Origin: Haliotis rubra
Taxonomy: Eukaryota
Assembly (NCBI RefSeq): GCF_003918875.1
Contig: NW_025765186.1
Location: 62,001 to 126,000 of the forward strand
Direction of reading: 5' to 3'
DNA: 64,000 nucleotides
In this document: positions 16,818 to 61,610 of the stretch, in pieces
Position numbering within the stretch: position 1 is the first letter of the stretch
Layout: the number at the start of each line of letters is the position of its first letter
Made by a program: the position numbers and the translations under genes
The notes under the pieces: generated by a model
Told to the model about the DNA's origin: nothing
What the model saw: the letters and a program-made list of their open reading frames with translations, nothing else
Databases searched by the model: none

Positions 16818-19800
16818 TCACTGGGTATGTGATAATTTAGAGTATATGTCGCCAACAACAACACATTGAAGCCTGCCTCCATCCGCGACGTCGTAAACGT
16901 CATCTTCCACTCCAGCAGCTTCACCCCCACCTCTGTAGTTCCCAGGTGACTCAGAAGCCGGGGTCATGTCCGTCAGCTGTATGTCGGTGTACCACTCCAG
17001 CTCCTGTACAGAGGTATCGTCCATCTCGGCAGCCCTGGGGCGTACAGGGTCCTCTGTCTGGGGGGCACTGTGAGGTAAGAACAATGAAAATTGATATATT
17101 TAGCACAGGACCAACATTGACCACATCACAGTCAAAATTTGGGTTTAAAAAAATATAGGTTCATCACATATCTGAATATTTATGGTTTGTTAGAAAGCGT
17201 GAGCAGTTGTGAAACGAAAAGAGAAGACAGTCGTCCAAGTAAAGAGGCAACATTATCACATCACACCACCTGTCCTGTGTAGAATCAACCGTGGACATCT
17301 GGTGACATTATCACATCACACCACTTGTCCTGTGTAGAATCAACCGTGGACATCTGGTGACATTATCACATCACACCACTTGTCCTGTGTAGAATCAACT
17401 GTGGACATCTTGTGACATTATCACATCACACCACTTGTCCTGTGTAGAATCAACCGTGGACATCTGGTGACATTATCACATCACACCACTTGTCCTGTGT
17501 AGAATCAACTGTGGACATCTGGTGACATTATCACACCACACCACCTGTCCTGTGTAGAATCAACCGTGGACATCTGGTGACATTATCACATCACACCACT
17601 TGTCCTGTGTAGAATCAACCGTGGACATCTGGTGACATTATCACATCACACCACTTGTCCTGTGTAGAATCAACCGTGGACATCTGGTGACATAAACTGA
17701 CGTACTAAACAAAGTACACACCTGATGCTTTGGTAAAATGGTTTCCTGAAAACAGCGTAATATTTAGATGAGTGTTTTGATTGCGACTCACAAGTCACAC
17801 ACATTGTGTATGTGTTGCAATAACACCATAGATAGCGTACCCTAATGGAACATTGCTGGCAAAATATTTACGTTGTTTTAATAGTCTCAAAACACCAGTC
17901 TAGCTATTCTCGAACGTTCGAACTTCGTAAGCCCATTCTCAACGCATTGGCTACGATGAAAGTTAAGAATTCTTAGGGCTACAAACGTTTCGGGAATAAG
18001 GACCCTGGTGTGTACTTTTTTTGTTCACCAGTATATTTACTTCATTTTTTGGTTATATAGAGTTATAGTCTAACTCCCTCGTTCGCAGTGACACAGTAAG
18101 ACGCTGCTTTTAGCAATATGCCAGCTATATCACTGCAGGAGACACCAGAAATACACTTGACGCAGAGCACCCATGTGTGGAATCGAAACCGATTCTTCGA
18201 CGTGCCCAGCGGACGTTTTAACCACTATGCTACCACACCAACCCAGTCGTTTGGAAGAGTGAAGGGATTGGTTTTAGTGTAGGAGAGAATCAACTACTGT
18301 TGCTATGAAATGAGAGCCCTGTCACACTTTTGCACTTCTGCATATCTTTATTCTTTATGAGTTGCGCATTGACATTTTTTTTCAGACGCAGTCGTACGCA
18401 CAATACGCAGCTCTTGTGCATCTCAATCGTTTTGTGTACGTTTTACGTACGCCGGCATGCGCACATTACTGCCCAGCAGGTGTGATAGTTTTGGACGTGC
18501 ACAAAATGATGCTGCGTACGCTGTTACGCAGGTCAGAAGTTATAAATACAGAGTGCATCGATCCCAGGTCGGTCGAGCGCGGTACGTATCTGCTATGTGT
18601 TCGTAGCGGTTCCTACGCGGAAATACGCCCGGCACGAGATATGAGAAGCGTATATTTGACGAATACATAGCGTACTTGCAGCGCAGATACAATGGACGCT
18701 GAGCGAACTCCTTGCGAATGCTAACGTACTGCACTATTCAGTACCGCTTGTATGCAATCTGGCAGCCGCCGTTATAATAAACCGACATCAGTTATATAGG
18801 TGCATCAGAAGTGCGTCAGGCATGCGGTCGGCATAAGTTAGGTGTGTCCGAAATACGCTTGACAGGCAGAGAAAAACACGATTTGTGGTGTGTTTTTCAT
18901 CACTGTTTAACTGTTGACAGGATAAGATCGAAAGCTGTATGATTTGACTCCAGGCATCGTGCCACACCCTTGAAGAGATGTGTCAAAAGTCAGTTAATAC
19001 ATTCAGCATCCACTGGTGTTGATGAAGGTTTGACAACAATGACGCATAGACAACACTAAGCGATTGAAGAAAGCTTGAGGAATGATGTTCTGTGTCTGAA
19101 CCAACACTTGTTCCAATTCAGTTTGTCAGTGGCGGATTCTGGGTTTGACGTAAACGTCGGTCCATTTCATCCCAAACATTCTCACTAGGCAATGGGGTCC
19201 CGAGAAACAGCTGGCAAGGGGAGTATAGGAATGTCCTTCTGTCACAACACAAACCACCAGTATCTTGCCGAAGCGTGAACTTACGTCTCTGTCCTTGAAT
19301 GAACGGCTGCACCTGAGGTCCAACAATCCCATCCCTTTATCGGTTGTGTCGGACAATGAGATGTGATGACGCCCCATACCATAACGCTTTCGCTACCAAA
19401 CTGTCGACGTTGATCAACACACGCGTCAGCATACCGTCCAGCATCACCGTCTGTACACCTTTGACCAGCCATCTGAGCTGTCCAGAAGAAATGTCGACAA
19501 AACACCATCCCAATCCTGTCTCATGTGCCATAGATGCTGTCTGCACCACGCAAGATGTGGCTGTCGGTGACGTTGGAACATAATTGGACGTACAGGCCGT
19601 CAGGGATGGATGTTGTGCTCCCTTAATCTGTACATTCCTGAACTGATTGGACGTAAGCCAGGAATGGTCCGAGCAGTCAAACTGGCAGTCTGGAATCGAT
19701 TCCTTAGATGGGTCAGCCGAATGTGGTTGTCTTGCCAATTCGGCGTCAAGCGTGGATGCCCGGTCCGAGGCAAATCTCTCGTGTTGCCACATGTTGAAAA

Positions 19801-22800
19801 CGTTTCCATAGAGATGAGATCGTGTTTCGATGGACACCCAAATCTCTGGCCACTTCATTTTGGACCATTCCAGTCTCCAGCATACCCACGCTGACGCTGA
19901 ATGTCTGTAAGTCGAGGCATGACGTACACGCTGTTTAGGCTGAACTTAACGTGTTTTCCACAAAATTCAAAGGTTAGAGAAAAAGCAATCGTTCTTCAAT
20001 TTTCAATATCAGGTGTGTGAACTTCAGGTGTAAAAAAAACATGCAAAAAGTTCATTGTGCACAAAGTGCACAAGTCAAGCGTGATACGTAACATAAAATT
20101 CCGTGCAAAGACAGTGCTTTGATACATGTTTATTTTAAAATTAATTTTATTGATGTAATTTTATGCTATGCACAGTTACTTTTTTCCGCTAGTCGCGGAA
20201 GGTCGCGGGTTGGATCCCCGACCGTGTCATAGCAAAAGACGTTAAAATATTGTACTTGTTGGTGCCTGCCTGGCGCACGACATTAATGGGTACAACAAGG
20301 ACTGGTCGGCTCGGAGTCAGTATAATGTGTCTGAGTGGGGTATTCATGCTTCAGTATGGTATGGTATCCTCACTATAAACCCAGCTTCAGTCTGGGCTAG
20401 TACAAACAACCACACATACACGCGCATGCACGTCGTCATATGAGCGAAATGTATCAAGCACGACGTTAAACCCAATTTCACCTCACCTCTAATCGTTTAC
20501 ATTCTTTACAGGTTTTCGCCCAATCGTAAAGCAGCCATACTATTCTCAATCAAATGACTAGTTGTCAAACGAACTCGAGCGCAATTATTTATGTAGTCTA
20601 TTCTGTCTAGCAAAGGTAACATTGAATTGAGTTGTGTTTTAGCAATATTCAAGCAACAGAAATGAGCTTTACACATTGTGGATAGTCGGACCTAGGTCTC
20701 TTCGTTGTGACAACAGAACGCTAAACCAAGAGACTGGCCCACTAAGCGACATGAGACACGATATCATAACGGTATAAATATATGTTTTGTCGTTATGCAC
20801 TAGTCAGTAATATGTTTGCTGTATCACAGAGACCTGTTAATACTACAGTAGTGCATAGTGTACTGACTCGCTCTGTTAGAAATGTTGGGATTCCGTCACC
20901 GGGAATGTTGGGATTCCGTCACCGGGAATGTTGGGATTCCGTCATAGGGAACGTTGGGATTCCGTCACAGGGAATGTTGGGATTCCGTCACAGGGAATGT
21001 TGGGATTCCGTCACAGAGACCTGTAAATACTACAGTAGTGCATGGTGTACTGACTCGCTCTGTTAGAAATGTTGGGATTCCGTCACATGGAATGTTGGGA
21101 TTCCGTCACAGGGAATGTTGGGATTCCGTCACAGGGAATGTTGGGATTCCGTCACAGGGGATGTTGGGATTCCGTCACATGTTGGGATTCCGAATGTTGG
21201 GATTCCGTCACATGGAATGTTGGGATTCCGTCACAGGGAATGTTGGGATTCCGTCACAGGGAATGTTGGGATTCCGTCACAGAGACCTGTAAATACTACA
21301 GTAGTGCATGGTGTACTGACTCGCTCTGTTACAAATGTTGGGATTCCGTCACATGGAATGTTGGGATTCCGTCACAGGGAATGTTGGGATTCCGTCACAG
21401 GGAATGTTGGGATTCCGTCACAGGGGATGTTGGGATTCCGTCACAGGGAATGTTGGGATTCCGTCACATGGAATGTTGGGATTCCGTCACAGGGAATGTT
21501 GGGATTCCGTCACAGGGAATGTTGGGATTCCGTCACAGAGACCTGTAAATACTACAGTAGTGCATGGTGTACTGACTCGCTCTGTTACAAATGTTGGGAT
21601 TCCGTCACATGGAATGTTGGGATTCTGTCACAGGGAATGTTGGGATTCCGTCACATGGAATGTTGGGATTCCGTCACAGGGAATGTTGGGATTCCGTCAC
21701 AGGGAATGTCGGGATTCCGTCACAGGGAATGTCGGGATTCCGTCACATGGAATGTCGGGATTCCGTCACAGGGAATGTCGGGATTCCGTCACATGGAATG
21801 TCGGGATTCCGTCACAGGGAATGTTGGGATTCCGTCACAGGGAATGATTACAAACCTAACTCAGAAGCTAGACATTTTGTACGACGAAGGTATCATGGGA
21901 AATACGTAATGCATATATTGCTCACTCGCCCAACCACTCACTCACTCAGTCGCTGACTCAACCACTCACATAAGTACTTATTAAGCCATGCACTCAATCA
22001 GACACTCAACCCTGTCATCACACATTCAATCATTCAACCACTCACTGACTCACCTGTGCTGTTGTCTCACGCGTCGCCAATACTTGCAGTACACAACCAA
22101 GACGATCATTAGGATGAAACTGAACACTGCCGTGGACACTCCCACAGACAGTCCTACTGCACCACCTGACAGAGAAGAAGGTTAACCAAGTTATTGTGAT
22201 CATGCGGAGTTCTCAACTTGTATTGTATGACACTCCCACAGACAGTCCTACTGCACCACCTGACAGAGAAGAAGGTTAACCAAGTTATTGTGATCATGCG
22301 GAGTTCTCAACTTGTATTGTATGACACTCCCACAGACAGTCCTACTGCACCACCTGACAGAGAAGAAGGTTAACCAAGTTATTGTGATCATGCGGAGTTC
22401 TCAACTTGTATTGTATGACACTCCCACAGACAGTCCTACTGCACCACCTGACAGAGAAGAAGGTTAACCAAGTTATTGTGATCATGCGGAGTTCTCAACT
22501 TGTATTGTATGACACTCCCACAGACAGTCCTACTGCACCACCTGACAGAGAAGAAGGTTAACCAAGTTATTGTGATCATGCGGAGTTCTCAACTTGTATT
22601 GTATGACGCTCCCACAGACAGTCCTACTGCACCACCTAACAGCGAAGAAGGTTAAAGAAGTTACTGCGATCATGCCGTGTTCTCAACTTGTATTGTATGA
22701 CAATCCCACAAAGTCCACTGCACGGCCTGACAGAAGAAAGGGTTAACTTCTGAACAGCCAATAAAAGACACTTGATCATACCGAATTATCAACTTGTATA

Positions 22801-25147
22801 GTCCTCCTAAACAAAATGCACCTATTAGACAAAGGTGCTGGGTTTCCCTCCGTGTTGATTCCTGTCACCGGGGGGCGTCGGGGTAGCCTAGTGGTTAAAG
22901 CGTTGGCTCGTCACGCCGAAGACCCGGGTTCGAATCCCCACATGGGTACAATCTGTGAAACCCATTTCTTGTGTCCCCCGCCGTGATGTTGCTGGAATAT
23001 TGCTAAAAGCGGCGTAAAACCAAACTCAGTCAGTCAGTCAGTCAGTCCTGTCACCGGATCAGTAAGTTGTTCCCAGGACTAAATAGTGATGTGGTAAGGA
23101 GAGTAATGACATTTACCTTGTCTCATGGCAATACCGACCTGATTCACAATCTGTACCATAATGGGCGTCAATACATCCAGACACACAGGAGGACCCAAGC
23201 TGACAATATCCTCCATCACAACCACCTGGACATGCTGTACAGTTACCTCCTGGACTGTCACATGGTATGTTGCATCTCTGACCTTGATATCCTGGCTCAC
23301 AACCCTCGGTGCACCGTCCACTACCTTCAGCAGATTGATTACACAGGTTACCTTTACAATGACCATCGCACACAGAGAAACATTTTAGATCAAAGTACCC
23401 CGTGTCACACTCAGTGAGGCAATGTCCCGTCGTGTTGTCACAGTCAGAACAGTGCTGGTTGTCCAAACACGGACCCGCTGAAATTGAAGTTATTGGTTGA
23501 TTAAAAAAAGAACATTTAGTGGACACTAAATGTGGTCTTTAGAAAACGAGGCTAATCGTAGCTCAAACTGTTCGCCAAAGACCCGGGTTCGAGTCCCCAT
23601 GTGAAGCCCATTCCTGGTGTACCACGCCGGGATATTGCTTGAATATTGTTAAAACCATATTCACTCACTCGCTAAGCGAGACAAAAGATGCCTACCTGTA
23701 TTGTGTAAGTCTGACTACCTGTATATGCCTACCTGTATTGTATAAGTCTGATTACCTGTATATGCCTACCTGTATTGTGTAAGTCTGACTACTTGTATAT
23801 GCCCACCTGTATTGTATAAGTCTGACTACCTGTATATGCCTACCTGTATTGTGTAAGTCTGACTACCTGTCTATGCCTACCTGTATTGTATAAGTCTGAC
23901 TACCTGTATATGCCTACCTGTATTGTGTAAGTCTGACTACCTGTATATGCCTACCTGTATTGTGTAAGTCTGACTACCTGTATATGCCTACCTGTATTGT
24001 GTAAGTCTGACTACCTGTATATGCCTACCTGTATTGTATAAGTCTGACTACCTGTATATGCCTACCTGTATTGTGTAAGTCTGACTACCTGTATATGCCT
24101 ACCTGTATTGTGTAAGTCTGACTACCTGTATATGCTTACCTGTATTGTGTAAGTCTGACTACCTGTATATGCCTACCTATATTGTGTAAGTCTGACTACC
24201 TGTATATGCCTACCTGTGTTGTGTAAGTCTGACTACGCCTCTAGATTTGAAAAGATAACACACAAAACACAAAACCTAATTATTACAAAAAGAAGGACCA
24301 TTCTAGATAAAGCTTTGAAATAAACATAAAGCTTCTGTGTGAATGCGAATTAGTATAGCTTTTCATTTGTATTTGAAAGTTGGATACTTAATTATACACC
24401 TACTTCGCTTGCTCAACAATATATACGCCAACTAAGGACAACGCGTCTGGCCACGATTAAGACTGTGTGACTCACAGTAATTCCTAATGAAATTTCAATA
24501 TTATTTCCATTCGACGTTTCTCGACACGTTCTGGTAGCTTAATGAAGCAATGTACATCATATTTGGATACTATCCGAAATCCATACGACAATCAACGCCT
24601 CCGTGTCAACACAACAAGAAGTTCTGTCCCCTTGTGAGGCCGTAAGCACGAAACGTTACAAGAAGATACTTGATGTTACCTTGCCTGTGCCTATCATGAC
24701 AGGAGAGAGGAATGATAAGTTTGGATTCAGTCTACTGTGCCCGTATGGGTAACCAACGTTACAAGAAGATACTTGATGTTACCTTGCCTGTGCCTATCAT
24801 GACAGGAGAGAGGAATGATAAGTTTGGATTCAGTCTACTGTGCACGTGTTGGTAACCAACGTTACAACAGTGTGGCACAGTACCCTGGTAGCGATCAAAC
24901 ATATCAGAAGTGGCCAAATACACAGATTCACACACGACGCTATTTAAGTGAAATATACCTGTACGCAAAGATAACCACCATTTGATCTCAACTCGTAAGA
25001 CAGCCCAGTCGTTATTAACATCAAAACATGTAACTGTTGTGCTAATGTTACATACACAAATTAAACAGACAAGATGTGCCAAAGCAATATTCTACCTTCA
25101 ACAGCCATTACCAGGCATGCTATCCATATGACCTCCGAGACGATCAT
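16818..25147 (-). CDS. Type I membrane receptor, ~250 aa: signal peptide, EGF-like Cys-rich ectodomain (MEGF10/SCARF-like), TM, Tyr-motif tail
   Basis: Exons 25147-25096 (MIVSEVIWIACLVMAVE), 23477-23139 (GPCLDNQHCSDC…GCIDAHYGTDCES), 22165-22054 (GAVGLSVGVSTAVFSFILMIVLVVYCKYWRR), 17067-16818 (…WYTDI…VYDVA…IYSKL..*). All GT-AG, phases 1,1,2, total 753 nt. Confidence 0.8.
17249..17692. repeat. 55-bp minisatellite, 8 copies
   Basis: Unit ACATTATCACATCACACCACTTGTCCTGTGTAGAATCAACCGTGGACATCTGGTG. Confidence 0.95.
18095..18245 (-). mobile_element. Degenerate SINE family A copy
   Basis: Reverse-complement similarity to the head and body (CCCATGTG..AATCGAA, TTTAACCACTA.GCTACC). Confidence 0.6.
18960..20192 (-). 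mobile_element. Decayed Tc1/mariner transposon
   Basis: ATG at 19920; frameshifted peptides DLPRTGHPRLTPNWQDNHIRLTHLRNRFQTA (Tc1 HTH), FGSESVMVWGVITS and ENVWDEMDRRLR (DD34E region). Confidence 0.85.
20193..20489 (+). mobile_element. tRNA-derived SINE family B (Meta/MESC-like core), 5' truncated
   Basis: GTCATA.CAAAAGACGTTAAAAT…GGTACTTG…GCCTGGCGC core and CGACGTTAAACCCAATTTCACCTCACCTC tail. Confidence 0.8.
20825..21846. repeat. 23-bp minisatellite with higher-order structure
   Basis: GGAATGTTGGGATTCCGTCACAG runs punctuated four times by a ~50-bp spacer AGACCTGTAAATACTACAGTAGTGCATGGTGTACTGACTCGCTCTGTTA. Confidence 0.95.
22135..22745. repeat. 94-bp tandem repeat (~6.5 copies) spanning the splice acceptor of the TM exon
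   Basis: Copies start at 22135, 22229, 22323, 22417, 22511, 22605 and ~22699 (degenerate). Confidence 0.9.
22870..23047 (+). mobile_element. tRNA-derived SINE family A, with target-site duplication
   Basis: Full copy flanked by TCCTGTCACCGG on both sides. Confidence 0.9.
23688..24237. repeat. 37-bp minisatellite, ~15 copies
   Basis: Unit ATGCCTACCTGTATTGTGTAAGTCTGACTACCTGTAT. Confidence 0.95.
24652..24866. repeat. 104-bp tandem duplication
   Basis: AACGTTACAAGAAGATACTTGATG…CAGTCTACTGTGC at 24652 and 24756. Confidence 0.85.
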
Positions 25148-26336: not shown

Positions 26337-26675
26337 GACCGCCTCCGTAGTGTAGTGGTTAGAGCGTCCGCCCGTAGTACGGAAGGTCGCGGGTTCGATC
26401 CCCGACTGCGTCATACTTAAAGACGTTAAAATATGGTACTTGTTGGTCCCTGCCTGGTCGGCTCGGACTGGTCGGTTCGAAGTCAGTACAATGTGTCTGA
26501 GTGGGGTATTCATGCTTCACTGCGGCATGGTATCTCAGTGGGCTAACACTTTAAAACCAGCTTCAGTCTGGGATAGTACAAGCAGCCGCACATACACATA
26601 CACGCGCATGCACGTCGTCATATGAGCGATATATTCTCAAGCACGACGTTAAACCCAATTTCACCTCAGCTCACC
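26337..26675 (+). mobile_element. tRNA-derived SINE family B, full length
   Basis: A box GTGTAGTGGTTAG, B box GGTTCGATCCC, conserved core and tail; flanked by CTATGTCAAG direct repeats. Confidence 0.9.
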
Positions 26676-51721: not shown

Positions 51722-52286
51722 CTCATATCACATTACATCCCAAGGTACCAGAAGACCGGTATTGTGAGTGAGTATCATAAGACCCTGACTAAGCTTAGTA
51801 GTAAGCCGGATTACTGTTGACGATAGGTTATACGACGGACGTCCCAAAAGTAGTCGGCCTAACTATACTGTCGATGTCCAATGTTAGGAAAGCTTCCATT
51901 TTGTTTTGAAGGATTTATTAGCAAAGCCGTATCCAAAATTTCACGTATGTTTATAATGTGGTTAACGAGATATTAGTCATCACAACTCAATGAGGTATAA
52001 TATTTCTTTAAAAAATTGCAGAAAGTGAAAAACGATCTGTCATTTCGTACCTGTTGGGTAATGGTATGCCCTCAGATAATATCTTATAAAATATGTACAG
52101 TATAGTATTGGATGACTTCCCGTCATAGTCAACATTCAAAGATTTGGATTACTTGATTTATATTTAGACTGTTTTTAAAGGACACCCCCATTATATGAAG
52201 GCAGATTACCATATTAGGAACCATGTGGATATAACACACCGTCCTGAGCATCCTAACTGTTTATTTCTATTTGCAGACACTACAAG

Positions 52287-55200
52287 ATGGAGGCATCTGG
52301 AGCAATGCTGATACTCTTACAAGCCCTACTTATATTCAGTGAGTACTAAANNNNNNNNNNNNNNNNNNNNNNNNNNNNNNNNNNNNNNNNNNNNNNNNNN
52401 NNNNNNNNNNNNNNNNNNNNNNNNNNNNNNNNNNNNNNNNNNNNNNNNNNNNNNNNNNNNNNNNNNNNNNNNNNNNNNNNNNNNNNNNNNNNNNNNNNNN
52501 NNNNNNNNNNNNNNNNNNNNNNNNNNNNNNNNNNNNNNNNNNNNNNNNNNNNACTTCGTGACCTAATGTAAATACCTAGCGCCCAAGTATAACAAGCTGT
52601 TTCTTCCTTTTCATAACGATTATAGCATCCAACAATCGATACAGGTACAATTTCCTATTTCATTTCTTGCATCAATATTTATAACCCACATCTTTGTCAC
52701 GATCCAATATTTTCTTTCTGATAAGAAACACTGTTTCAATGGTTTGCTTGCGAACGTGCGAATCCATTCTATGAAACAGGCATTTAGTTGAATTTAGTTA
52801 CACCATGCGAATCCTTTCTATGAAGCAGGAATTTAGTTGTATTTAGTTACACCATGCGAATCATTTCTATGCAGCAGGCATTTAATTGAATTTAGTTAGA
52901 CCATGCGAATCCTTTCTATGGAGCAGGCATTTAATTGAATTTAGTTAGACCATGCGAATCCTTACTATGAAGCAGGAATTTAGTTGAATTTAGTTACACC
53001 ATGCGAATCCTTTCTATGAAGCAGGCATTTAGTTGAATTTAGTTAGACCGTGCGAGTTGTGCGTGAACCCGCTTTTTGTCATCATCATATGGATGGAGTG
53101 AGAATGTAGCCTCATCATAAATATTACCTTATTGTAATGTGGTTCGACCCCGTTCGTTTCATTTTGATTTTTCAGTATTATCAGTGCACTGTCAAAACAG
53201 CTGTGACTGGGGCAAGTACGGAGACAACTGCAACAAAGACTGTCCATCCACCTGCCTTACCAACCCTGTACGAAAGCTGAAACACTGCCAGAAGGAGACA
53301 GGGAGGTGTTCTGAAGGCTGTGTTCCTGGCTGGTTTGACGATCTCTGTGACAAGGCCTGTGGCAAGAACTGCTTGAGAAACATCTGTAATCGTCAAAATG
53401 CCATCTGCACGCATGGATGTACTGGAAACTACACAGGGGAGCTTTGCAACATTAGAAAAGGTTTGACCGAAACGATTTGAATTCGTAATGGTTGATGCAG
53501 AGCTAAATGAACTCTGTATTGTATATGCATTGTGTGTAAATACATAGACCGTGTTCTTGTGCCAGTCCACCACGTGCAAAATGAGTGAGTGAGTAAGTGA
53601 GTTAATATTTAACGTCACATCGGCAATATTTCAGCCATATCGTGACGAGAACATATTTAACATTGAAATGGAAAATGTGTATACTATCAAAACCTGTCAT
53701 CGAATGACAGTTAAACAACAAGAATATCACAAATACAATTAAAACTAGTGTAAAAAGTTAAAACTAATAGCACTATTAGGACAATACAAGATAAAAACAG
53801 GCCATAGATCGCCAACAACTGAAGGTAGATCACCATACTAGGATCCATGGGGACTTACTGTACCTTTGCTACCTGCATGGACCCTAGTTGGATTTACACC
53901 ATCCCTTCAGCCGTTGGCGATTGTAGGAACAGTTTAGCCGAATTGTAAAGGAACAAATGTACTACGTTTAAGAATCGGGTAAGCAAAAATTTAACTCTGA
54001 AAGTTTTGGGACTTACGTACCCTCTCAGGAGGACAATAATTTTACGATACTTTAACCCCCTTCGAGGATACAGTCACTAACAATCACAGTTACTAATTTA
54101 TACTTACCATCATAAAATATGGACATGCTTGACTGTGATTCTTTCATCACAAGGGATTCAAAATGGAGGATCCTCACCTTTTAATAGGTATTCTTGAGTA
54201 TATCTTGTGTGGCCAATACGACATCGTCGTATGATGACCTCTTCAAATCTGGACTGACAACCCAAGTAGGTGTAACCAGTGTAGGGTTTTATTTCATGTA
54301 ATTTATTGATAACGTGCAAAATGAAGCCACCGCTGATGAAAGTCATTGTTCATGTAGTTCAGTATGCAGGGTAGGTAATCGCGTAAAGGTAAAACAACAA
54401 ACTGTAACATGTAAAACGGTTAAGGTGCTGAAGCCAACACAGGTAATTCTTTATAACGTATCTGTGTTGTGTTTTTGTATCTTGATACACATCCAATAGA
54501 TACATTTAAGGTACTGTTATTTGAATCATATAATTCTTGTTCATCAAAAGCAGTAACAGTTGTTCCCGAGACACCGACGAAAGCACCTTCTGACTCGAAC
54601 TCAACACAACCGACGAACGCATCTTCTGACTCGAACTCAACACAACCGACGAAAGCATCTTCTGACTCGAACTCAGCACAACCGACGAATCTTGCTGCGA
54701 TCCTTGCCCCAGTGTTCATCGTCATCATCATCGTCACTATCATCATTGCTGTGGTGATGTTCAGACTGTAAGTACATATTCTACTAGAAGTTGTGAGTAT
54801 ATGAGTTTGAATTAAATGAATAAACTGACAGTTTCTGACATATGTATTGCCTGTCAGGGGCCATGCTATATTTCACATATTGGGAAACATGGTAAATGCT
54901 GTCATACAATCTCTGTGTAGATGTCCATGCATAATATATAAAACACATGCCTCAGTATTGCCACATGTACTTTTACAGAAGGAAGTGCAAAGCGATAAGA
55001 ACACCTAGAGGTCAGCCGGATAAACGTGCACGGTAAGGAAATACTCTTTATTCAACATTTATGCATGTGAAAGTGCATCTTAGGAAACGTACTCTGTGAA
55101 ATCTTCAGAATAACTAAAACAAAAAAGCGTAACTCATGATCAAGAGTTGTGATGCCCAAATATTTAGTGTAAAAAACTACTTATTAATACTTTGTAAGGC

Positions 55201-58200
55201 AAATGCATATTTTTCATTGCAGTTCTGATGAAAACAGTAAGTATACCTTATTCAAAATCATTTCGCTTGCACAAAGACGTGCCATGTAAACACACAAATA
55301 GCTGGAATGTGACAAATTATATAGCATATTGTAATCATATAGCATAACGACTGCACCTACTGTTTCGGATATAGCACAACACATATCCGCAGTATTATCT
55401 TTCAAGTCACCACTCCAGGCTGATTCGATGACTTTCGACTGATTTCTGCTTAGTGTGTGTGTAGTTTCCAAATCCTTTGCTCAGTTCTTAACACGTCTAT
55501 ACTCAATTCAAATTCAATTCAACTTCAAAGTCACATGTCATTCACTTCTTCAACAAAAATGCCAATACCTTCAATACAGAAGACTTGACTTCTTTTCTTC
55601 ATCAGTCCTTCAATGATTGACATTAATATATATGCTGATGCAGGTCCTCAAATCCTTAATCATATAGAGCCAACACTCCAAATCCAAATCCACGCCTAAC
55701 ACCACTACATGGAGTCCCTCTGACCATGTACTCACATCTCTAGTCATGTGTCAACTCATAGAATTACTTCCCTTGGCCCCTGGCTGGAGCGAACTGTCCC
55801 AAAATGTAGACCAATTTAGTTTCGCACAAAAATATGTTTCAACATAAAATAATTCCAAAGCATAATTTTGGCCATAACAGTGTGGGTTTATTTTCTCATT
55901 TCCCACTTGAATTCAAGATCCTGTAGTTTCAGGATTAACAAGTCACTGTTTCTTGAACATCGTTATGCCCATAATTATTTCATTAACGTAATTTCAATTT
56001 TCTCGAGATAGATTTATAGGATTATTGTGTCATTTTTGCACAAGCTCCACGTGTTTCTTCATCTTCGTCATTATAACCATACAACTGAACCATCAACGTT
56101 TTTTTATCAATGTGCATGTCAGCTGGGACATAGAAATAATCATTTACCATAACGTATAAGTACATATTTGTTAAATATGTTTAATTTGACTGCCAAATAC
56201 CATTTCAGCTTCTTTAATGGAGAAGCCGCCTGCACCAGCTCAGAACAGTAAGTTAAATGTTAATTGACCTTCCAGTATATCGATGATCTTCTGTGAGAAG
56301 AGAACATCAAAATAACATCTTGTTACTCGTTTTTGGCTTTGATTGACACGGTAACTGTCGAAGTAAATGTTTTATTCTTAAATTCTGTGTTATACTTTAA
56401 CACACTTTGACATGTTCTGTAACTCCATAGTGTATATTATTTTGGCAGCTTCGTCTCAGGATGAGGAAATACAAGGCACTCTTACACTACAGACAGGTAT
56501 AAATTGAATTCTCTTCTGCACTTTACTTTTGTGAGACAGAAGTATTTGTTGGTATACAACTTGCAAATATTCACATCTTCTGTATTCCAGAGTTTGATAT
56601 TTACAATGGTTAATCAACAAATGTAATCATTCAGTGTCCTCTATTACAATCAAACTTCAGGTGTTTGTATTTATTTGAACAGATTTGCCATACGAGCTGA
56701 TGAGGGATATCACTGACATCTTCGTTGAAACCGACAGTTTCAAAAAGGTGAAAGAAAAACTGGAAAAGTTTGGCCACGTGACAATAAGCGGTGGTCCAGG
56801 AGCAGGTAAAACACCCGTGGCCCTGATGCTTGGAGCTGAATTCAGGAAACGGCGGTATGAAGTGGTACTGGTTGAGGACGTTGGTACTTTCCAGTTGTCT
56901 GAGTGTCTGTGTAAGAGCAAAGACGTATGTGTCATATTCGATGACGTATTTCAAAACGCTGGGCCATCTATAGACGTACATCGCCTGACACAAGTTCTCT
57001 ATGAGCTCCATGGACATTGTGAACCGTGGACAAGCAAATTGGAAAGAGGATATCACAATCTGCAGCAGACGCCAGGAACCGAACATAGAAGCAACGACCA
57101 TCCAAACCTGTATTTCATATTCACCACAGATACCAAAAAGTTTCAATGTGCAATGTCAAAATTTAAAGACCCTATATTTTTCCAATACTGGTCTATCGTT
57201 GACGTGACCAAACTGAAAGATGAAGAGAAAAAAGCAATATGGATGAAACACAAAAGCCATTTCAAATGTCAAACAAATGTCGACGTGAAAATGATTATTG
57301 AGTACAAAGATATAATTGGTTTTCCATTGACATGCAAACTTTTCTCTAGTCACATGCCCTTTCAAAAACTCAAAGAATCGTTTTTTGAGATGCCTGTTTA
57401 CCATCTTAAACGTGAACTGGATATGATCGTTAATCAGCTGGATGACACGTCATTGAAACTCCTGTTGACATCACTATGTTGCAGCGAACAGAAACTCAAA
57501 CACAGAAAATCAGAACTCCACACTAAATGTGACAACAAAGTACAAAACACGCACCTAAGGGATGTTTTAGCTCTTGTCTCATGTTCCCATCCTCTAATAC
57601 AGGACATGTGTATGTCTGCCATATTGGATACTAAACCAGAGCTGTTCCTCCATAACTGTAGTTTAGCGTTCATCTGTGACCATGTACGTGATCAGCAGCA
57701 TGACACCGCTCCAGCAGAACAGACTGTCATTTATTTCCCAGGTGCTCATAGTGACGTCATCACCGCCAGGCTGGCTGAAGCTGTTGCTGATGGCACGTTC
57801 AGTAACTACATCATGCATCCCATCTGGAAAAGGGGGGAAGTTGCAGACAAAGTGCAACAAATGCTTGGACATGAAGGCACTATGTCACGTGATACTAAGC
57901 ACAGTATTCTCCATTATTCCTGTTTCCTGGGGAACAATGACGCAATAAAACGACTCCTCCCCAACTGTGACATCAACAGACGTGCTGTGAATGGTTGGAC
58001 GCCAGCTATGTTCGCGGTTGCTGGTGGACAGATGGACAGTTTGGATCTCCTTGTGAAGCATAAAGCTGATATCACATAACTTGATGCTATGAACAATGAC
58101 CTATTCCACTTGGCTTGTCAATACACAGACATTTCGGTTGTGAAAATAGTTAAAAGTTTGCTGAAAAAGAGTAAGGCTTGGCATATTAACTGCCGAGGAA

Positions 58201-61200
58201 TGAATGACTGGACACCGATTACGTGTGCAGTTTTCTCTGGTAAGAATGATATCTTGGACTATCTTGTCCACAAAAAGAAAACTGACTTAACATTAAGAGA
58301 TAGCAACAACAACACTGTTCTTCATCTGGCATGTTTGTATGGAAATGAATCCATTGTTAATTCGTTGTTACCATCAACAGACAAAGACGGTCATGGGAGA
58401 AACGGCATGACGCCTGTGATGTGTGCTCTATTGTCAGGGAGGATGGATGTGTTTAACCTTCTCGTGTCACAAAATGCAGACACGGCATTGACCGACGATG
58501 ATAACAACAGTCTCCTTCATTTAGCCTGCCTCCTTGATGACATACCCAGCATCCTACTAACAAAGATTGACGCTGATACTCAAGGAAATCACGGTTGGAC
58601 GCCTCTAATGAAGGCAGCTGTCAATGGATCAAAACATGCATTTGACCAGCTGGACAAAGCAAAGGCTAATCTTTACCCGAAAGACGACAACAGCAACAAT
58701 ATCCTTCACCTGGCATGCCATGGTGGACATGTCTCCATTGTGAAACATCTACTGACAACGTATGACATGAACAGTCGTGGGAATAAAGGATGGACGCCAG
58801 TTATGTATGCAGCTGCCAATGGCTCGAAGGACGTGTTTGACCTGCTTGTGTCTAAGGGTGCTGACTTATCCTTGAAGGATGACTACAGCAACTCTGTATT
58901 TCACTTAGCATGTGTAGGTGGGAACCTATCCATTGTGGAATATCTGCTGCCAAAATCTGACATCAATATCCGGGACAATTATGGAAGGACTGCAATTATG
59001 ACAGCAGCATCTGCAGGCCAAAGTGTTGTCTTTGACGTTCTTTTGTCGAAAAAAGCTGATCTTACAATGTCTGACGAGTACAATGACACTGTCCTACATT
59101 GTGCATGTGCGGGAGGAAATCGATCCGTTGTAGAATATTTACTGGAAAGAATTGACAACAATATTAAAGGAAAGAATAGCTGGACACCAGTGATGGTTGC
59201 AGCTCGCTTTGGAAAGTTAGAGCCTTTCAACCTGCTTGCTTCAAAAGACGCCGATCTCACTCTGATTGACGATCACGGAAACAATCTGCTTCACCTCGCA
59301 TGTCAGGGTGGAAACAGGTTGATCGTGGAAGATCTGCTTCCAAAATTTGACATAAACAGTCGTGGACATAAGGGCAGAACACCTTTGATGCATGCAGCTG
59401 TGAATGGACTGAGAGAAGTGTTTGACCTCCTTATGTCAAAGGGGGCTGATTTTTCACTGAAGGATGAAAACAACAATTCTGTTTTTCATTTGGCTTGTCG
59501 TGGTAGAAATATGTCCATTGTAGAAGGACTCCTACCACATTTTGATGTCAACGGTTTGGAAGATAAAGGTAGGACAGCAATAATGAAGGCCGCTTGTGCT
59601 GGAAATAAGAGTGTCTTCGACTTTCTACTTTCAAAGAACGCCGACCTGTCCATAACTGATGACTACAAAGACAATGTTCTGCATTTTGCATGTAAGGGAG
59701 GTGGGACGAAAATTGTTCAAAATATTCTTCACAGATTTGACATTAATGCTCTGGGAAGGAATGGGGTCACTCCAGTCATGCTGGCTGCTGAATTTGGAAA
59801 CAGAAATATTTTTGACAAACTTGTTTCAAAGCAAGCAGATCTTACTCTCACTGACGACTACAGGAACAACATACTTCACTTTGCATATCAGGGTGGAAAC
59901 AGTTTCATCGTAGATCACCTGCTTTCACTGCCATTTGATATTGGCGTCAACAACCGTGGAAGACATGGCTTGAACCCCGTAATGGTTGCAGCTCGGTTTG
60001 GAATGTTAGACCCTTTCAACTTGCTTCTTGCGAAAGAAGTGGATTTCACTGTGACTGACGACCATTGTAACAACATGCTTCACCTTGCATGCCAGGGTGG
60101 AAATTTAACAATCATCGAGCGTGTTCTTCAAGAGTTTGACATCAATAGTCGTGGACAAGATGGCAGGACACCTTTGATGTATGCAGCTGTTGGTGGACGA
60201 AAGAACGTGTATGGTCTGCTTGTGTCAAAGGGGGCTGAACTGAAGGATGATCATAGGAGCTTCAGAACAAGTGTCATTGACATGTTTACGCCCGGAAAAG
60301 CTGACCCCTTACTGACCGGTGGCCACAGGGATAACGTGCTGCATTCTGCATGTCAAGGAGGGAACACAACCATTGTAAGACATCTTCTGAAGAATATTGA
60401 TATCAATGTCAAAGGACAGAACGGCCTTACACCAATAATGCATGCAGCCAGGGCTGGAAAGAAGATTGTGTTCAACCTACTTCTTTCAGAAAAGGCCAAC
60501 AGGAAACTACTTGATCACTACATAAACAATGTGCTCCATTTCGCTTGCCAAGGTGGCAATAGATCCATCATAGAACAACTCCTAAACGAGTTTGACATCA
60601 ACGGCCCTGGAGAGGATGGATGGACGCCAATAATGATGGCAGCTCTCAGTGGAAAGATGGATGCTTATGATCTGATTGCAACAAATGGGGGTATTCCATC
60701 TTTGACTACTCCACAGAATGACAATGTTCTTCATGCAGCTTGTCAAGGTGGAAACAAAGCCCTTGTTAAGAAGGTCATCGGCAGCTTTGGCATCAACACA
60801 AGGGGTAAGAATGGTTGCACGGCCCTGATGAGAGCTGTTGTTGGAGGCCATATGAGTGTGATGAAGTTCCTGATGTCCCGGCATGCTGACCATACTCTGG
60901 TGGACAAGGATGGACTCACTCTTCTACATCTTGCGTGCAAATTTGGTCACCTTGACATTGTGAAGCATATCTCAGACAAGTTCAATATAAATATTAAAGA
61001 CAAGGCTGGTTTAACATACATCATGACATCAATATTGTATGGTAAAGTGGAAATATTTGACTACTTGAAAAGAAAAGGCGCGGATTTGTCTCTAGTTGAC
61101 AACACAGGAGATGACGCCTCTAGCCTTGCGCTTAAAGTAGGCTGCAGACAAATCTTAGAAAGACTTCCACCGAAGGGAGAGTCAGAGAAGAACGTCGAAC

Positions 61201-61610
61201 CATGGAATGAACTGATGAAGTCACTTGTAAAGAAGGAGTCATGTAATCTGCAGATGTACAGATCAAAGAGTCCTGAACTGAAACAAAAAGGCCAGACTGG
61301 AGACACATTACTCCATCTGGCCTGTCGAGGAGGCAACAGACACTGTGTGGAGTTCCTGCTCCCGTCCTATGACATCAATGTCAGAGGTCGGTACAACTGG
61401 ACACCGGTGATGATGGCGGCTGCATGTGGACATACTGATATCTTCAAGCTGCTGGTGGATCACAAGTCAGATCTCTCTCTGGTCTCAGACACGGGAGAAG
61501 ATCTCCTCAGTCTACTAAGAGAAGCAACAACAGTGACATTGTTGACGCAGTCAGAAACATGCACACCGTTGATGCATAGAGCAGGTAATTCTGACAATTC
61601 ATTTGTGTGA
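52287..61610 (+). CDS. Transmembrane STAND-ankyrin receptor: signal peptide, EGF-like ectodomain, Ser/Thr stalk, TM, nSTAND3-like NTPase, ~35 ankyrin repeats (in-frame TAA at 58077-58079)
   Basis: Exons 52287-52338, 53176-53460, 54551(or 54554)-54767, 54979-55032, 55223-55236, 56209-56247, 56449-56496, 56683-61610. All GT-AG, phases 1,1,2,2,1,1,1, total 5637 nt. Walker A GGPGAGKT, Walker B VCVIFDDVF; TM LAAILAPVFIVIIIVTIIIAVVMF followed by RLRKCK. Confidence 0.8.
52351..52552. other. Assembly gap (N run) inside intron 1 of the receptor gene
   Basis: Run of n. Confidence 1.
52757..53055. repeat. 49-bp minisatellite, ~6 copies
   Basis: Unit ACCATGCGAATCCTTTCTATGAAGCAGGCATTTAGTTGAATTTAGTTAC. 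Confidence 0.9.
53582..54312 (-). mobile_element. I/Nimb-clade LINE 3' end (intronic, antisense)
   Basis: EEVIIRRCRIGHTRYTQEYLLKGEDPPF, a 3' UTR, and tail GATGTGACGTTAAATATTAACTCACT.ACTCACTC. Confidence 0.8.
56683..58079 (+). CDS. nSTAND3-like P-loop NTPase domain plus first ankyrin repeats (5' part of last exon)
   Basis: FVETDSFKKVKEKLEKFGHVTISGGPGAGKT, VIFDDVF, FIFTT, IGFPLTCKLF, SHPLIQD; ends ADIT-TAA. Confidence 0.85.
58089..61610 (+). CDS. Ankyrin-repeat array (3' part of last exon, same frame as the NTPase)
   Basis: Alternating 'G.TP.M.A...G' and 'N.LH.AC.GG' repeats over 1173 aa. Confidence 0.9.
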   Translation: MNNDLFHLACQYTDISVVKIVKSLLKKSKAWHINCRGMNDWTPITCAVFSGKNDILDYLVHKKKTDLTLRDSNNNTVLHLACLYGNESIVNSLLPSTDKDGHGRNGMTPVMCALLSGRMDVFNLLVSQNADTALTDDDNNSLLHLACLLDDIPSILLTKIDADTQGNHGWTPLMKAAVNGSKHAFDQLDKAKANLYPKDDNSNNILHLACHGGHVSIVKHLLTTYDMNSRGNKGWTPVMYAAANGSKDVFDLLVSKGADLSLKDDYSNSVFHLACVGGNLSIVEYLLPKSDINIRDNYGRTAIMTAASAGQSVVFDVLLSKKADLTMSDEYNDTVLHCACAGGNRSVVEYLLERIDNNIKGKNSWTPVMVAARFGKLEPFNLLASKDADLTLIDDHGNNLLHLACQGGNRLIVEDLLPKFDINSRGHKGRTPLMHAAVNGLREVFDLLMSKGADFSLKDENNNSVFHLACRGRNMSIVEGLLPHFDVNGLEDKGRTAIMKAACAGNKSVFDFLLSKNADLSITDDYKDNVLHFACKGGGTKIVQNILHRFDINALGRNGVTPVMLAAEFGNRNIFDKLVSKQADLTLTDDYRNNILHFAYQGGNSFIVDHLLSLPFDIGVNNRGRHGLNPVMVAARFGMLDPFNLLLAKEVDFTVTDDHCNNMLHLACQGGNLTIIERVLQEFDINSRGQDGRTPLMYAAVGGRKNVYGLLVSKGAELKDDHRSFRTSVIDMFTPGKADPLLTGGHRDNVLHSACQGGNTTIVRHLLKNIDINVKGQNGLTPIMHAARAGKKIVFNLLLSEKANRKLLDHYINNVLHFACQGGNRSIIEQLLNEFDINGPGEDGWTPIMMAALSGKMDAYDLIATNGGIPSLTTPQNDNVLHAACQGGNKALVKKVIGSFGINTRGKNGCTALMRAVVGGHMSVMKFLMSRHADHTLVDKDGLTLLHLACKFGHLDIVKHISDKFNINIKDKAGLTYIMTSILYGKVEIFDYLKRKGADLSLVDNTGDDASSLALKVGCRQILERLPPKGESEKNVEPWNELMKSLVKKESCNLQMYRSKSPELKQKGQTGDTLLHLACRGGNRHCVEFLLPSYDINVRGRYNWTPVMMAAACGHTDIFKLLVDHKSDLSLVSDTGEDLLSLLREATTVTLLTQSETCTPLMHRAGNSDNSFV

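What the first reader, a model, noticed from the sequence alone, without database searches (positions are those of the whole stretch)
16818..61610. Two divergently oriented receptors share an exon skeleton but have different cytoplasmic modules
Seen: the minus-strand gene (25147-16818) and the plus-strand gene (52287-) both have a 52-nt coding signal-peptide exon (17 codons + 1 nt), a phase 1-1 EGF-like exon with a similar stretch (G.C.EGC.PG, C…C….CN) and a phase 1-2 TM exon. One ends in a short Tyr-motif tail, the other in a 4.9-kb intronless STAND-ANK exon. Inference: a modular paired-receptor family in which the STAND-ANK cassette was grafted onto a MEGF/SCARF-like receptor by exon shuffling, possibly working as a sensor/regulator pair.
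Basis: partly seen in the sequence, partly recalled or inferred. Interest (0 to 1): 0.7.

Follow-up and report, generated by a model that had tools for sequence, protein, structure and literature searches.

The report
Abalone membrane-anchored STAND-ankyrin receptor gene
The plus-strand gene belongs to an abalone-only family of single-pass membrane proteins that join a small EGF-like outer domain to an NLR-style switch (nSTAND3 NTPase) and about 36 ankyrin repeats. This copy carries a premature stop, and its 'pairing' with the small receptor gene 27 kb away is only partly supported.

Summary
Both genes have a 52-nt signal-peptide exon, a phase 1-1 Cys-rich EGF-like exon (37% identity over 70 aa, E 2e-9) and a phase 1-2 TM exon.

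Two corrections:
- The TM exon does not join the 4.9-kb exon directly. Four small exons of 54, 14, 39 and 48 nt lie between them.
- The big exon has an in-frame TAA at 58077-58079, where the near-identical copy on contig C2777 reads TTA.

Neither N gap touches coding sequence.

The genome is Haliotis rubra. The SP-EGF-TM-nSTAND3-ANK architecture is a family trait:
- 34 of 49 related RefSeq proteins from four Haliotis species have it. They are misnamed 'PP6 regulatory ankyrin subunit-like'.
- About 20 of the top 48 EGF-exon loci in this genome have the STAND exon 3-16 kb downstream.

Head-to-head pairing with a CED-1-like EGF receptor recurs at about 20 loci, 1.7-14 kb apart. That partner type has a different tail. 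The window's partner belongs to a mostly tandem subfamily and lies 27 kb away across minisatellites.

Membrane-bound STAND or NLR receptors are already known (sea cucumber Ig-TM-NACHT, anthozoan TM-NLR), so this is a new variant of a known kind. A sensor/regulator function is untested. The scan had already noted this receptor type on other DNA of this genome (s1-329484, s1-327970).

The parts
25096..25147 (-). Minus gene, ATG/signal-peptide exon, 52 nt, phase 0 to 1
   Evidence: ATG at 25147, GT donor after 25096; an acceptor-like site lies 8 nt before the ATG
23139..23477 (-). Minus gene, Cys-rich EGF-like exon, 339 nt, phase 1-1
   Evidence: 65% identical to the N-terminal half of P0069, 'cell death abnormality protein 1-like'. 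At least 149 related exons in the genome
22054..22165 (-). Minus gene, TM exon, 112 nt, phase 1-2
22135..22747 (.). 94-nt tandem repeat, 6.6 copies, that repeats the acceptor and the first ~31 nt of the minus gene's TM exon
16818..17067 (-). Minus gene, cytoplasmic tail exon with stop. Conserved motifs ELEWYT[DE]IP, DDVYDVA and IYSKL
   Evidence: 15 paralogous loci at 56-98% identity keep the three Tyr motifs
25148..52286 (.). 27-kb spacer between the two start codons, largely minisatellite arrays; no Pfam match above gathering score in its four longest ORFs (177-248 aa)
51534..51721 (.). Assembly gap, upstream of the plus gene's ATG
   Evidence: flanks collinear on the C2777 copy
52287..52338 (+). 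Plus gene, ATG/signal-peptide exon, 52 nt, phase 0 to 1
   Evidence: 76% identical to the N-terminus of H. asinina P0011
52351..52552 (.). Assembly gap inside intron 1 of the plus gene
53176..53460 (+). Plus gene, exon with two EGF-like repeats (12 invariant Cys), 285 nt, phase 1-1
   Evidence: Two RNA(?) contigs end their match exactly at 53176, and the joint 53460|54551 is GT..AG
54551..54767 (+). Plus gene, Ser/Thr/Pro stalk (36-nt repeat, 3.2 copies) plus TM helix, phase 1-2
   Evidence: (joints 53460|54551 and 54767|54979, copy-number variant of the stalk repeat)
54979..55032 (+). Plus gene exon 4, 54 nt, basic juxtamembrane stretch, phase 2-2
55223..55236 (+). Plus gene exon 5, 14-nt micro-exon (SDEN), phase 2-1; inferred
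   Evidence: It is the only candidate matching the SDEA/TPEA micro-exon of P0011 and P0002. AG..GTAAGT sites. Not directly seen in the RNA contigs
56209..56247 (+). Plus gene exon 6, 39 nt (..MEKPPAPAQN), phase 1-1
   Evidence: the equivalent exon starts RefSeq isoform P0016 of the C2777 copy
56449..56496 (+). Plus gene exon 7, 48 nt, phase 1-1
   Evidence: (contig X4 record 27 links it to the big exon)
56683..61610 (+). Plus gene exon 8, 4928 nt: nSTAND3 NTPase (about 56683-57800; Walker A GGPGAGKT, Walker B IFDD), then about 36 ankyrin repeats in 65-aa double units, final stop 61608-61610
58077..58079 (+). Premature in-frame TAA (codon 702 of the model), just after the first two ankyrin repeats
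   Evidence: the C2777 copy has TTA (Leu) here. Not checked against reads

Best explanation
THE PLUS GENE
It is one copy of a family seen so far only in Haliotis: type I membrane proteins of about 1,500-1,880 aa.
- Outside the cell: a signal peptide, two MEGF10/CED-1-style EGF-like repeats and a glycosylated Ser/Thr stalk.
- One TM helix, followed by basic residues.
- Inside the cell: a roughly 60-aa linker built from four small exons, an nSTAND3 P-loop NTPase and about 36 ankyrin repeats.

Most likely mechanism (inferred from STAND biology). It is a membrane-tethered NLR-like switch. A ligand is sensed either by the ectodomain or by the variable ankyrin array. That releases the NTPase for nucleotide-dependent oligomerisation at the membrane, which starts an innate-immune or engulfment response.

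This copy. The window's copy has a premature TAA after the NTPase. At best it makes a 701-aa protein without its ankyrin array. It may be a dying copy or allele.

THE MINUS GENE
It is a separate, intact 250-aa CED-1/MEGF10-like receptor with three conserved Tyr motifs, likely docking or sorting signals.

RELATION BETWEEN THE TWO
The two genes share an ancestral three-exon 5' module (SP, EGF, TM). At family level, such receptors and TM-STAND genes were duplicated together as head-to-head units. In this window the two are 27 kb apart, and functional coupling is not shown.
For: - Exon chain, phases and splice sites.
- RNA(?) contig joints 53460|54551 and 54767|54979, and a contig linking exon 7 to the big exon.
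- nSTAND3 above Pfam's cut-off, plus ankyrin repeats. Walker A and B intact.
- AlphaFold2 model of the NTPase, pLDDT 83. Foldseek hits (E about 1e-4, TM-score by query 0.33-0.47) include EfAvs5, plant resistosomes, SAMD9 and NLRP2. VIA Z 13-14 to AAA+ cores.
- 34 of 49 Haliotis RefSeq relatives carry SP + C.EGC..G domain + TM before the P-loop.
- The ectodomain alignment has 12 invariant Cys.
- About 20 of the top 48 EGF-exon loci have this STAND family 3-16 kb downstream on the same strand.
- About 21 of 48 have a minus-type EGF exon divergently within 15 kb.
- The partner in those compact pairs is P0069, CED-1-like.
- Premature stop TAA versus TTA.
- dN/dS 0.53 against the C2777 copy, compared with 0.41 between intact paralogues.
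- Tail motifs conserved.
- Ankyrin units vary at non-framework positions.
- Bacterial Avs5 uses nSTAND3 in an immune sensor: bioRxiv 10.1101/2025.07.08.663546.
Against: - No functional or expression data by tissue or challenge.
- The runs used are only guessed to be RNA and are contigs. Some came from close copies (93-97% identity).
- The joint after exon 4 was reported at 55030|56449 with 'between: not known'. Inclusion of exons 5 and 6 in this copy's transcript is therefore inferred from relatives, not seen.
- The EGF fold is not confirmed.
- The fold search does not separate STAND from other AAA+ ATPases.
- The stop was not checked against reads, and this assembly is reported elsewhere in the scan to contain errors.
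- The pairing could be only a by-product of unit duplication.
Confidence: 0.6

Rival explanations
1. First reader's reading. The two genes of this window work as a sensor/regulator receptor pair, co-expressed from a shared control region. The small Tyr-tail receptor modulates the TM-STAND receptor, or acts as its co-receptor.
For: Head-to-head EGF-receptor / TM-STAND units recur at about 20 loci with 1.7-14 kb between the EGF exons. Both ectodomains are of related Cys-rich type.
Against: - In the window the start codons are 27 kb apart, with minisatellites between them.
- The recurrent partner is another type (P0069) with an unrelated tail.
- The window-type tail occurs at only 16 loci, mostly in tandem arrays.
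- The ectodomains are only 37% identical.
- The window's STAND gene is truncated.
- Co-duplication of a unit explains the adjacency without any function.
Confidence: 0.12
2. The window's plus gene is a pseudogene, or a null allele, of an otherwise functional family, and does nothing here.
For: - In-frame TAA at 58077-58079, where the 95.6% identical copy has TTA.
- That copy has its own 1-nt deletion opposite window 59309, and its RefSeq models are short (P0016, 905 aa).
- Several paralogues carry stops.
Against: - All eight exons and all splice sites are otherwise intact.
- dN/dS of 0.53 is like that of intact paralogues.
- Contigs cover the exon on both sides of the stop.
- A 701-aa EGF-TM-NTPase product could still act.
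- The stop is unverified by reads.
Confidence: 0.4
3. Alternative splicing switches the plus gene between two products: a short-tailed EGF-TM protein (exons 5-6 skipped, frame shifts, stop inside exon 7) and the full TM-STAND receptor. A third form is a cytosolic STAND-ANK protein started at the Met of exon 6.
For: - Contigs in X3 and X4 jump from about 55030 to 56449. Read literally, that skips exons 5 and 6 and gives a stop after about 25 cytoplasmic residues.
- RefSeq isoforms P0016 and P0006 start at the exon-6 Met.
- P0070 is an SP-EGF-TM-only model.
Against: - The joint is flagged 'between: not known' and has non-canonical ends. Unaligned letters of the 14-nt and 39-nt exons may simply be hidden.
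- The short RefSeq models may be artefacts of broken copies.
Confidence: 0.15
4. These are two independent genes: an EGF-TM gene and a cytosolic STAND-ANK gene, joined only by read-through or chimeric gene models.
For: Some nSTAND3-ANK relatives have no TM head. Short isoforms exist.
Against: - The reading frame is kept through four linker exons here and in the paralogues mapped (C168).
- 34 models in four species show the fusion.
- An RNA(?) contig links the linker exons to the big exon.
Confidence: 0.05

Closest known systems
Sea cucumber membrane NLR AjNLRC4 (extracellular Ig, TM, intracellular NACHT), as cited in PMC13133943
   Same: Single protein with an extracellular recognition-type domain, a TM segment and an intracellular STAND-class NTPase. 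It is an invertebrate protein and is reported to drive phagocytosis of Vibrio.
   Different: It uses NACHT rather than nSTAND3 and Ig rather than EGF-like repeats, and it has no long ankyrin array. It is an echinoderm protein, and no sequence relation was shown here.
Anthozoan putative membrane-bound NLRs (PMC3879445)
   Same: A STAND NTPase tethered to the membrane through its N-terminus.
   Different: They have 3-4 TM helices with a gap-junction-like Cys-rich region, a NACHT domain and LRRs. They lack a signal-peptide type I ectodomain.
Bacterial Avs5 (Sir2-nSTAND3-TPR/Sel1/PPR), bioRxiv 10.1101/2025.07.08.663546; PDB 9jap
   Same: Same Pfam NTPase family (PF20720). Same tripartite logic of N-terminal module, NTPase and C-terminal helical repeats. 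Appears among the Foldseek matches.
   Different: Cytosolic, with a Sir2 effector and a phage-sensing role. No membrane part and no ankyrin repeats.
CED-1 / Draper / MEGF10 / SCARF engulfment and scavenger receptors
   Same: Type I receptors with the C-x-EGC-x-x-G style of atypical EGF repeats and Tyr-based tail motifs. NCBI names relatives 'cell death abnormality protein 1-like' and 'MEGF10'.
   Different: Only 2-5 repeats here instead of 15 or more. No EMI domain and no NPxY motif. No Pfam EGF model passes threshold. The plus gene's tail is a STAND-ANK module.
PP6 regulatory ankyrin repeat subunits (ANKRD28/44/52), the RefSeq name of the family
   Same: Long ankyrin arrays.
   Different: By established knowledge those are soluble ankyrin-only proteins. 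Here there is a signal peptide, a TM helix and an nSTAND3 NTPase, so the name is misleading.
Fungal NLR-like proteins with ankyrin/TPR/WD repeat sensors (e.g. PMC12258605)
   Same: A STAND NTPase followed by a long, fast-evolving helical repeat array, in large lineage-specific families.
   Different: Cytosolic, with other NTPase clades and other N-terminal effectors.

Membership tests
STAND NTPases, Pfam nSTAND3 (PF20720) | Match to the family HMM above the gathering score | tested here: met
   62.5 bits against a cut-off of 27.2, E 4.8e-17; only profile positions 1-75 of 155 are covered
STAND NTPases, Pfam nSTAND3 (PF20720) | Intact Walker A and Walker B | tested here: met
   GGPGAGKT and VCVIFDD. 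G36, G39, G41 and D87 are invariant in 33 relatives
STAND NTPases, Pfam nSTAND3 (PF20720) | P-loop core followed by a helical arm, then a C-terminal repeat domain | tested here: met
   AlphaFold2 pLDDT 83: alpha/beta core for residues 1-175, then a helical domain. About 36 ankyrin repeats follow
STAND NTPases, Pfam nSTAND3 (PF20720) | Fold closer to STAND than to other AAA+ ATPases | tested here: inconclusive
   Foldseek lists Avs5, resistosomes, SAMD9 and NLRP2 among many AAA+ proteins. The VIA top rows are DnaA, proteasome and p97, Z 13-14
STAND NTPases, Pfam nSTAND3 (PF20720) | Ligand-triggered, nucleotide-dependent oligomerisation | not testable with these tools
   Needs biochemistry
Animal NLRs in the strict sense | NACHT domain | tested here: not met
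   Pfam finds nSTAND3, not NACHT
Animal NLRs in the strict sense | Leucine-rich repeats at the C-terminus | tested here: not met
   Ankyrin repeats only
CED-1 / MEGF10 / SCARF receptors | Recognisable EGF or EGF_laminin domains | tested here: inconclusive
   Only sub-threshold hits: EGF_laminin best E 0.001 in 3 of 20 members, EGF_STAB1-2 best E 0.038 in 9 of 20. None for P0069. AlphaFold2 model unusable. No PDB sequence match
CED-1 / MEGF10 / SCARF receptors | N-terminal EMI domain and many (15 or more) EGF repeats | tested here: not met
   No EMI hit. There are 2 repeats in the plus gene, about 2.5 in the minus gene and about 5 in P0069
CED-1 / MEGF10 / SCARF receptors | NPxY and YxxL motifs in the tail | tested here: not met
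   No NPxY. YTDI, YDVA and YSKL are present in the minus tail
Classical paired (activating/inhibitory) immune receptors | Near-identical ectodomains with opposite signalling tails (ITIM versus an adaptor-binding TM) | tested here: not met
   Ectodomains are 37% identical. There is no canonical ITAM spacing, and an ITIM-like SxYxxL occurs only in some paralogues
PP6 regulatory ankyrin subunits (RefSeq name) | Soluble ankyrin-only architecture | tested here: not met
   SP, TM and nSTAND3 are present

The most novel reading that the evidence does not exclude
The head-to-head units (a CED-1-like small receptor and an EGF-TM-nSTAND3-ANK receptor) form a co-regulated two-part surface surveillance system in abalone. 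Extracellular recognition by EGF-like domains is passed directly, through one TM helix, to a STAND oligomerisation switch: a 'membrane resistosome or inflammasome' with no adaptor. The small Tyr-motif receptor, or a short splice form, acts as co-receptor or decoy.
Probability: 0.1. Interest if true: 0.8.

Novelty: new variant of a known kind. Interest (0 to 1): 0.5.

Why it matters
STAND or NLR-type switches are normally cytosolic sensors. Only a few membrane-anchored animal examples are described: anthozoan TM-NLRs and the sea cucumber Ig-TM-NACHT receptors.

This is a whole gastropod family, with dozens of genes in four abalone species. Its members couple a scavenger-receptor-like ectodomain to an nSTAND3 NTPase and a long variable ankyrin array. 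The family is hidden under a misleading automatic name.

It gives a testable system for two questions. How can extracellular recognition feed a STAND switch? How do lineage-specific immune receptor families grow by module exchange and unit duplication?

It is also relevant to abalone aquaculture disease (Vibrio, herpesvirus) if an immune role is confirmed.

Tried and rejected
1. Direct splice from the TM exon to the big exon. It is out of frame (phase 2 against phase 1) and gives a stop within 11 codons.
2. Keeping frame with an alternative weak donor at 55025 in exon 4. Rejected once relatives showed a 14-nt micro-exon and a 39-nt exon that restore the frame with strong sites.
3. A shared frameshift in exon 4 of both copies. 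Rejected for the same reason.
4. AlphaFold2 on the EGF-like exon with a 20-sequence alignment. pLDDT was 38, so the model was unusable and no fold search was made on it.
5. PDB sequence searches with P0069 and the P0011 ectodomain found nothing relevant.
6. The look-up of encoding contigs for P0001 found nothing on record.
7. Word-based protein searches for short-tailed relatives gave one hit each.
8. Fetching loci where the plus-type EGF exon has no STAND exon nearby (C2333, C2239, C2358, C176 and others), and fetching 30 EGF-exon loci for a tree.
9. A search of the own genome with PF20720 scored only 21 of 306 candidates, all from other nSTAND3 subfamilies.
10. ORFs in the 27-kb spacer are translations of minisatellites, not genes.

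Exons were searched one by one by reference. The joined model was used only in a local script to check frame.

Full report
WHAT THE WINDOW IS

The window is G000:C296:62001-126000 of a 1.38-Gb, 2,855-contig genome. Exact and near-exact RefSeq proteins name the organism as Haliotis rubra, blacklip abalone. GC content is 40.7%. There are two N runs, at 51534-51721 and 52351-52552.

THE GAPS (TESTED FIRST)

- The first gap ends 566 nt before the plus gene's ATG at 52287.
- The second gap begins 12 nt after the GT donor of the ATG exon, so it lies in intron 1.
- The ATG exon leaves phase 1 and the next exon enters in phase 1.
- The closest intact relative, H. asinina P0011, joins signal peptide and EGF-like domain without extra residues. 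No coding exon is therefore expected in the gap.
- Sequence on both sides of each gap maps in the same order and orientation on a 95-98% identical copy on contig C2777.
- I did not read or fill the unread letters.

THE MINUS GENE

It has four coding exons, all with GT..AG sites:

| Exon | Coordinates | Length and phase |
|---|---|---|
| ATG / signal peptide | 25147-25096 | 52 nt, phase 0-1 |
| EGF-like | 23477-23139 | 339 nt, phase 1-1 |
| TM | 22165-22054 | 112 nt, phase 1-2 |
| Tail | 17067-16818 | phase 2, ends in stop |

- The product is about 250 aa.
- The related P0069 gene also goes straight from TM exon to tail exon. This supports a four-exon model.
- The tail exon has 15 paralogous loci at 56-98% identity. 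All keep ELEWYT[DE]IP, DDVYDVA and IYSKL.
- These motifs are not a canonical ITAM, and there is no NPxY.
- The introns hold a Tc1/mariner-like ORF and several minisatellites. One is a 94-nt repeat that copies the TM exon's acceptor.

THE PLUS GENE

- 52287-52338, 52 nt.
- 53176-53460, 285 nt, phase 1-1.
- 54551-54767, phase 1-2. There is a NAGNAG acceptor pair at 54551 and 54554.

The TM exon ends in phase 2 and the big exon (acceptor at 56683) needs phase 1. They cannot join directly.

Contigs from four runs guessed to be RNA show these joints:
- 53460|54551, GT..AG.
- 54767|54979, GT..AG.
- A jump from about 55030 to 56449.
- A jump from about 56490 to 56677. One contig (X4 record 27) runs from there into the big exon.
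- Two contigs end their match exactly at 53176.

Mapping RefSeq relatives onto paralogous loci revealed two further small exons. The full chain is below.

| Exon | Coordinates | Length |
|---|---|---|
| 1 | 52287-52338 | 52 nt |
| 2 | 53176-53460 | 285 nt |
| 3 | 54551-54767 | 217 nt |
| 4 | 54979-55032 | 54 nt |
| 5 | 55223-55236 | 14 nt |
| 6 | 56209-56247 | 39 nt |
| 7 | 56449-56496 | 48 nt |
| 8 | 56683-61610 | 4,928 nt |

- All sites are canonical.
- The 5,637-nt CDS stays in frame.
- The only internal stop is TAA at 58077-58079, codon 702.

Exons 5 and 6 are inferred from relatives. The contig joint after exon 4 is flagged 'between: not known'. It may hide these short exons, or it may show a form that skips them. 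Skipping them would shift the frame and end the protein about 25 residues after the membrane.

DOMAINS OF THE PLUS GENE

- The big exon has nSTAND3 (PF20720, 62.5 bits, cut-off 27.2) and a very strong ankyrin signal.
- Walker A and Walker B are intact.
- About 36 ankyrin repeats form 65-aa double units. Framework positions are conserved and other positions vary.
- An AlphaFold2 model of the NTPase region, built from 33 relatives, reaches pLDDT 83.
- Foldseek matches include EfAvs5, plant resistosomes, SAMD9 and NLRP2, among many AAA+ ATPases.
- VIA-align gives Z 13-14 to AAA+ cores over residues 1-240.
- The fold class is therefore confirmed, but STAND-specific placement rests on the Pfam HMM.
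- The ectodomain has 12 invariant Cys in two repeats of the C-x-EGC-x-x-G type.
- No Pfam EGF model passes threshold and the structure prediction failed. 'EGF-like' is thus a pattern-level call.
- NCBI labels relatives 'MEGF10' and 'cell death abnormality protein 1-like'.

THE PREMATURE STOP AND THE C2777 COPY

- C2777:312500-332499 (minus strand) is collinear with window 44000-62443, introns and spacer included. The minus gene's EGF-like and tail exons also recur on C2777 at 97-98% identity.
- In the big exon the two copies are 95.6% identical. Where the window has TAA, the copy has TTA.
- The copy has its own 1-nt deletion opposite window 59309.
- dN/dS between the copies is 0.53 with dS 0.068. 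Two intact paralogues give 0.41. There is thus no sign of long neutral decay.
- Whether C2777 is the other haplotype or a young duplicate cannot be decided here.
- The stop was not checked against reads.

THE FAMILY

- A search with an intact paralogue's big exon found 49 Haliotis proteins with nSTAND3 plus ankyrin repeats. They come from H. rubra, H. rufescens, H. asinina and H. cracherodii.
- 34 of them carry a signal peptide, the Cys-rich domain and a TM helix before the P-loop.
- The others start with non-membrane heads, or at the exon-6 Met.
- An exhaustive HMMER search of 1.84 billion representatives found only 124 hits at E up to 1e-3.
- All ten of the upper-ranked hits I looked up are Haliotis. 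Weak hits are from mussels, oysters, scallops and another gastropod.
- Among the representatives inspected, the membrane form is confined to Haliotis.
- In this genome the NTPase query finds at least 120 loci.

WHICH TAIL FOLLOWS WHICH EGF EXON

- Comparing coordinates, about 20 of the 48 best plus-type EGF exons have this STAND family 3-16 kb downstream on the same strand. These include C2777 (three loci), C62 (two), C168, C1316, C1016, C12, C2796, C296:161870, C2426, C2813, C2473 (two), C2729 and C1175. C673, a lower-ranked partial EGF match, shows the same arrangement.
- Others show none in two independent searches that reached down to 26-30% identity. Examples are four loci on C2333, plus C2239, C2358, C2723 and C176.
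- This points to other tails. I could not fetch those loci to see them.
- Within the minus-type family, ectodomains 65% identical carry tails with no detectable similarity.

Module exchange is therefore real at family level. The STAND fusion is old and widespread, not an event of this locus.

PAIRING

- About 21 of the 48 best plus-type EGF exons have a minus-type EGF exon divergently oriented within 15 kb upstream, typically 1.7-9 kb (checked on DNA for C62, C2777, C168).
- Ten of these have the STAND exon confirmed downstream.
- With about 150 such exons in 1.38 Gb, this cannot be chance. It is what duplication of a two-gene unit would give.
- The partner in these compact units is the longer P0069 type (374 aa, CED-1-like).
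- The window's minus gene belongs to a shorter subfamily. Its 16 tail loci sit mostly in same-strand tandem arrays (C973, C2446, C2813, C496; another copy at C296:43153-47766).
- In the window the two start codons are 27 kb apart. The interval is filled by a dozen or more minisatellite arrays. Its longest ORFs are repeat translations.

SHARED SKELETON

- The 52-nt ATG exon (17 codons + 1 nt) is shared by the two window genes, by P0069 and by several TM-STAND relatives (P0003, P0005, P0008, P0009, P0011). It is not shared by all.
- In both window genes an acceptor-like site lies 8-10 nt before the ATG.
- Together with the 1-1 and 1-2 phases and the E 2e-9 similarity, this fits a common ancestral SP-EGF-TM module.
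- Phase 1-1 alone is the norm for EGF modules (established knowledge).

LITERATURE

- nSTAND3 appears in only five papers of the library. None is on animals. The clearest is bacterial Avs5.
- Membrane-bound animal STAND receptors are described in anthozoans (PMC3879445).
- In sea cucumber an extracellular-Ig / TM / intracellular-NACHT receptor is reported to drive Vibrio phagocytosis (PMC13133943).
- I found no paper on the abalone family.

EARLIER SCAN NOTES

Other windows of this genome were already noted to hold nSTAND3-ankyrin genes. One note describes a receptor type joining EGF and ankyrin parts (s1-329484). Others describe variable ankyrin arrays and assembly frameshifts.

VERDICT

- The fused membrane STAND-ankyrin architecture is real and is a family trait.
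- The 'paired sensor/regulator' idea is only supported as a genomic arrangement, and with a different partner type.
- The window's own copy is truncated as assembled.
- This is a new variant of a known kind of receptor. It is already present in annotation under a misleading name.

Noticed in passing
L037-L039 (C168:207000-236999), L035-L036 (C2777:128000-147999), L040-L041 (C62:271000-290999), L042-L043 (C1316:34000-53999): In paralogues of the plus gene, the last ~64 nt of the TM exon together with its 5' splice site is repeated head to tail 20 to about 100 times. The C168 array is about 6.5 kb, and each unit encodes ..VFLIILIVCIILAVVVFRL followed by gtaagt. The window copy has a single unit.
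   Followed up: partly
window 22135-22747: A 94-nt tandem repeat (6.6 copies, 95% matches) carries the acceptor and the first ~31 nt of the minus gene's TM exon, so several copies of the splice acceptor precede the real one.
   Followed up: partly
window 54573-54689: A 36-nt coding repeat (12-aa SDSNSTQPTNAS-like units with N-glycosylation sequons) forms the stalk of the plus gene. One RNA(?) contig lacks part of it, and a 3-nt deletion at 54731 is seen in three runs, which suggests length polymorphism.
   Followed up: partly
window 25148-52286: The spacer between the genes is packed with minisatellites: periods of 21, 35, 56, 62, 63, 77 and 89 nt, and arrays up to 2.2 kb. Long ORFs there (e.g. 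29877-30539, 32505-33167, 45880-46413) are repeat translations.
   Followed up: yes
window 19000-19945 (minus strand): A Tc1/mariner-like transposase-looking ORF with frame breaks lies inside the last intron of the minus gene. It has no Pfam hit at E 0.01 on the longest piece.
   Followed up: partly
window 53553-54350: Very high summed contig depth (up to about 2,900) in intron 2 of the plus gene, with many loose ends. This looks like a dispersed repeat expressed or present at many loci.
   Followed up: no
L038-L039 (C168), region coordinates 5214-5243 of the joined stretch: RefSeq model P0002 places its first coding exon antisense within the EGF exon of the divergent CED-1-like neighbour. In compact pairs the two transcription units may therefore overlap head to head, or the model may be wrong.
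   Followed up: no
G000:C296:43153-47766 and C296:151826-162136: The same contig holds, just outside the window, another minus-type short receptor gene (same strand) and another EGF-TM-STAND gene. The window is therefore part of a larger cluster.
   Followed up: no
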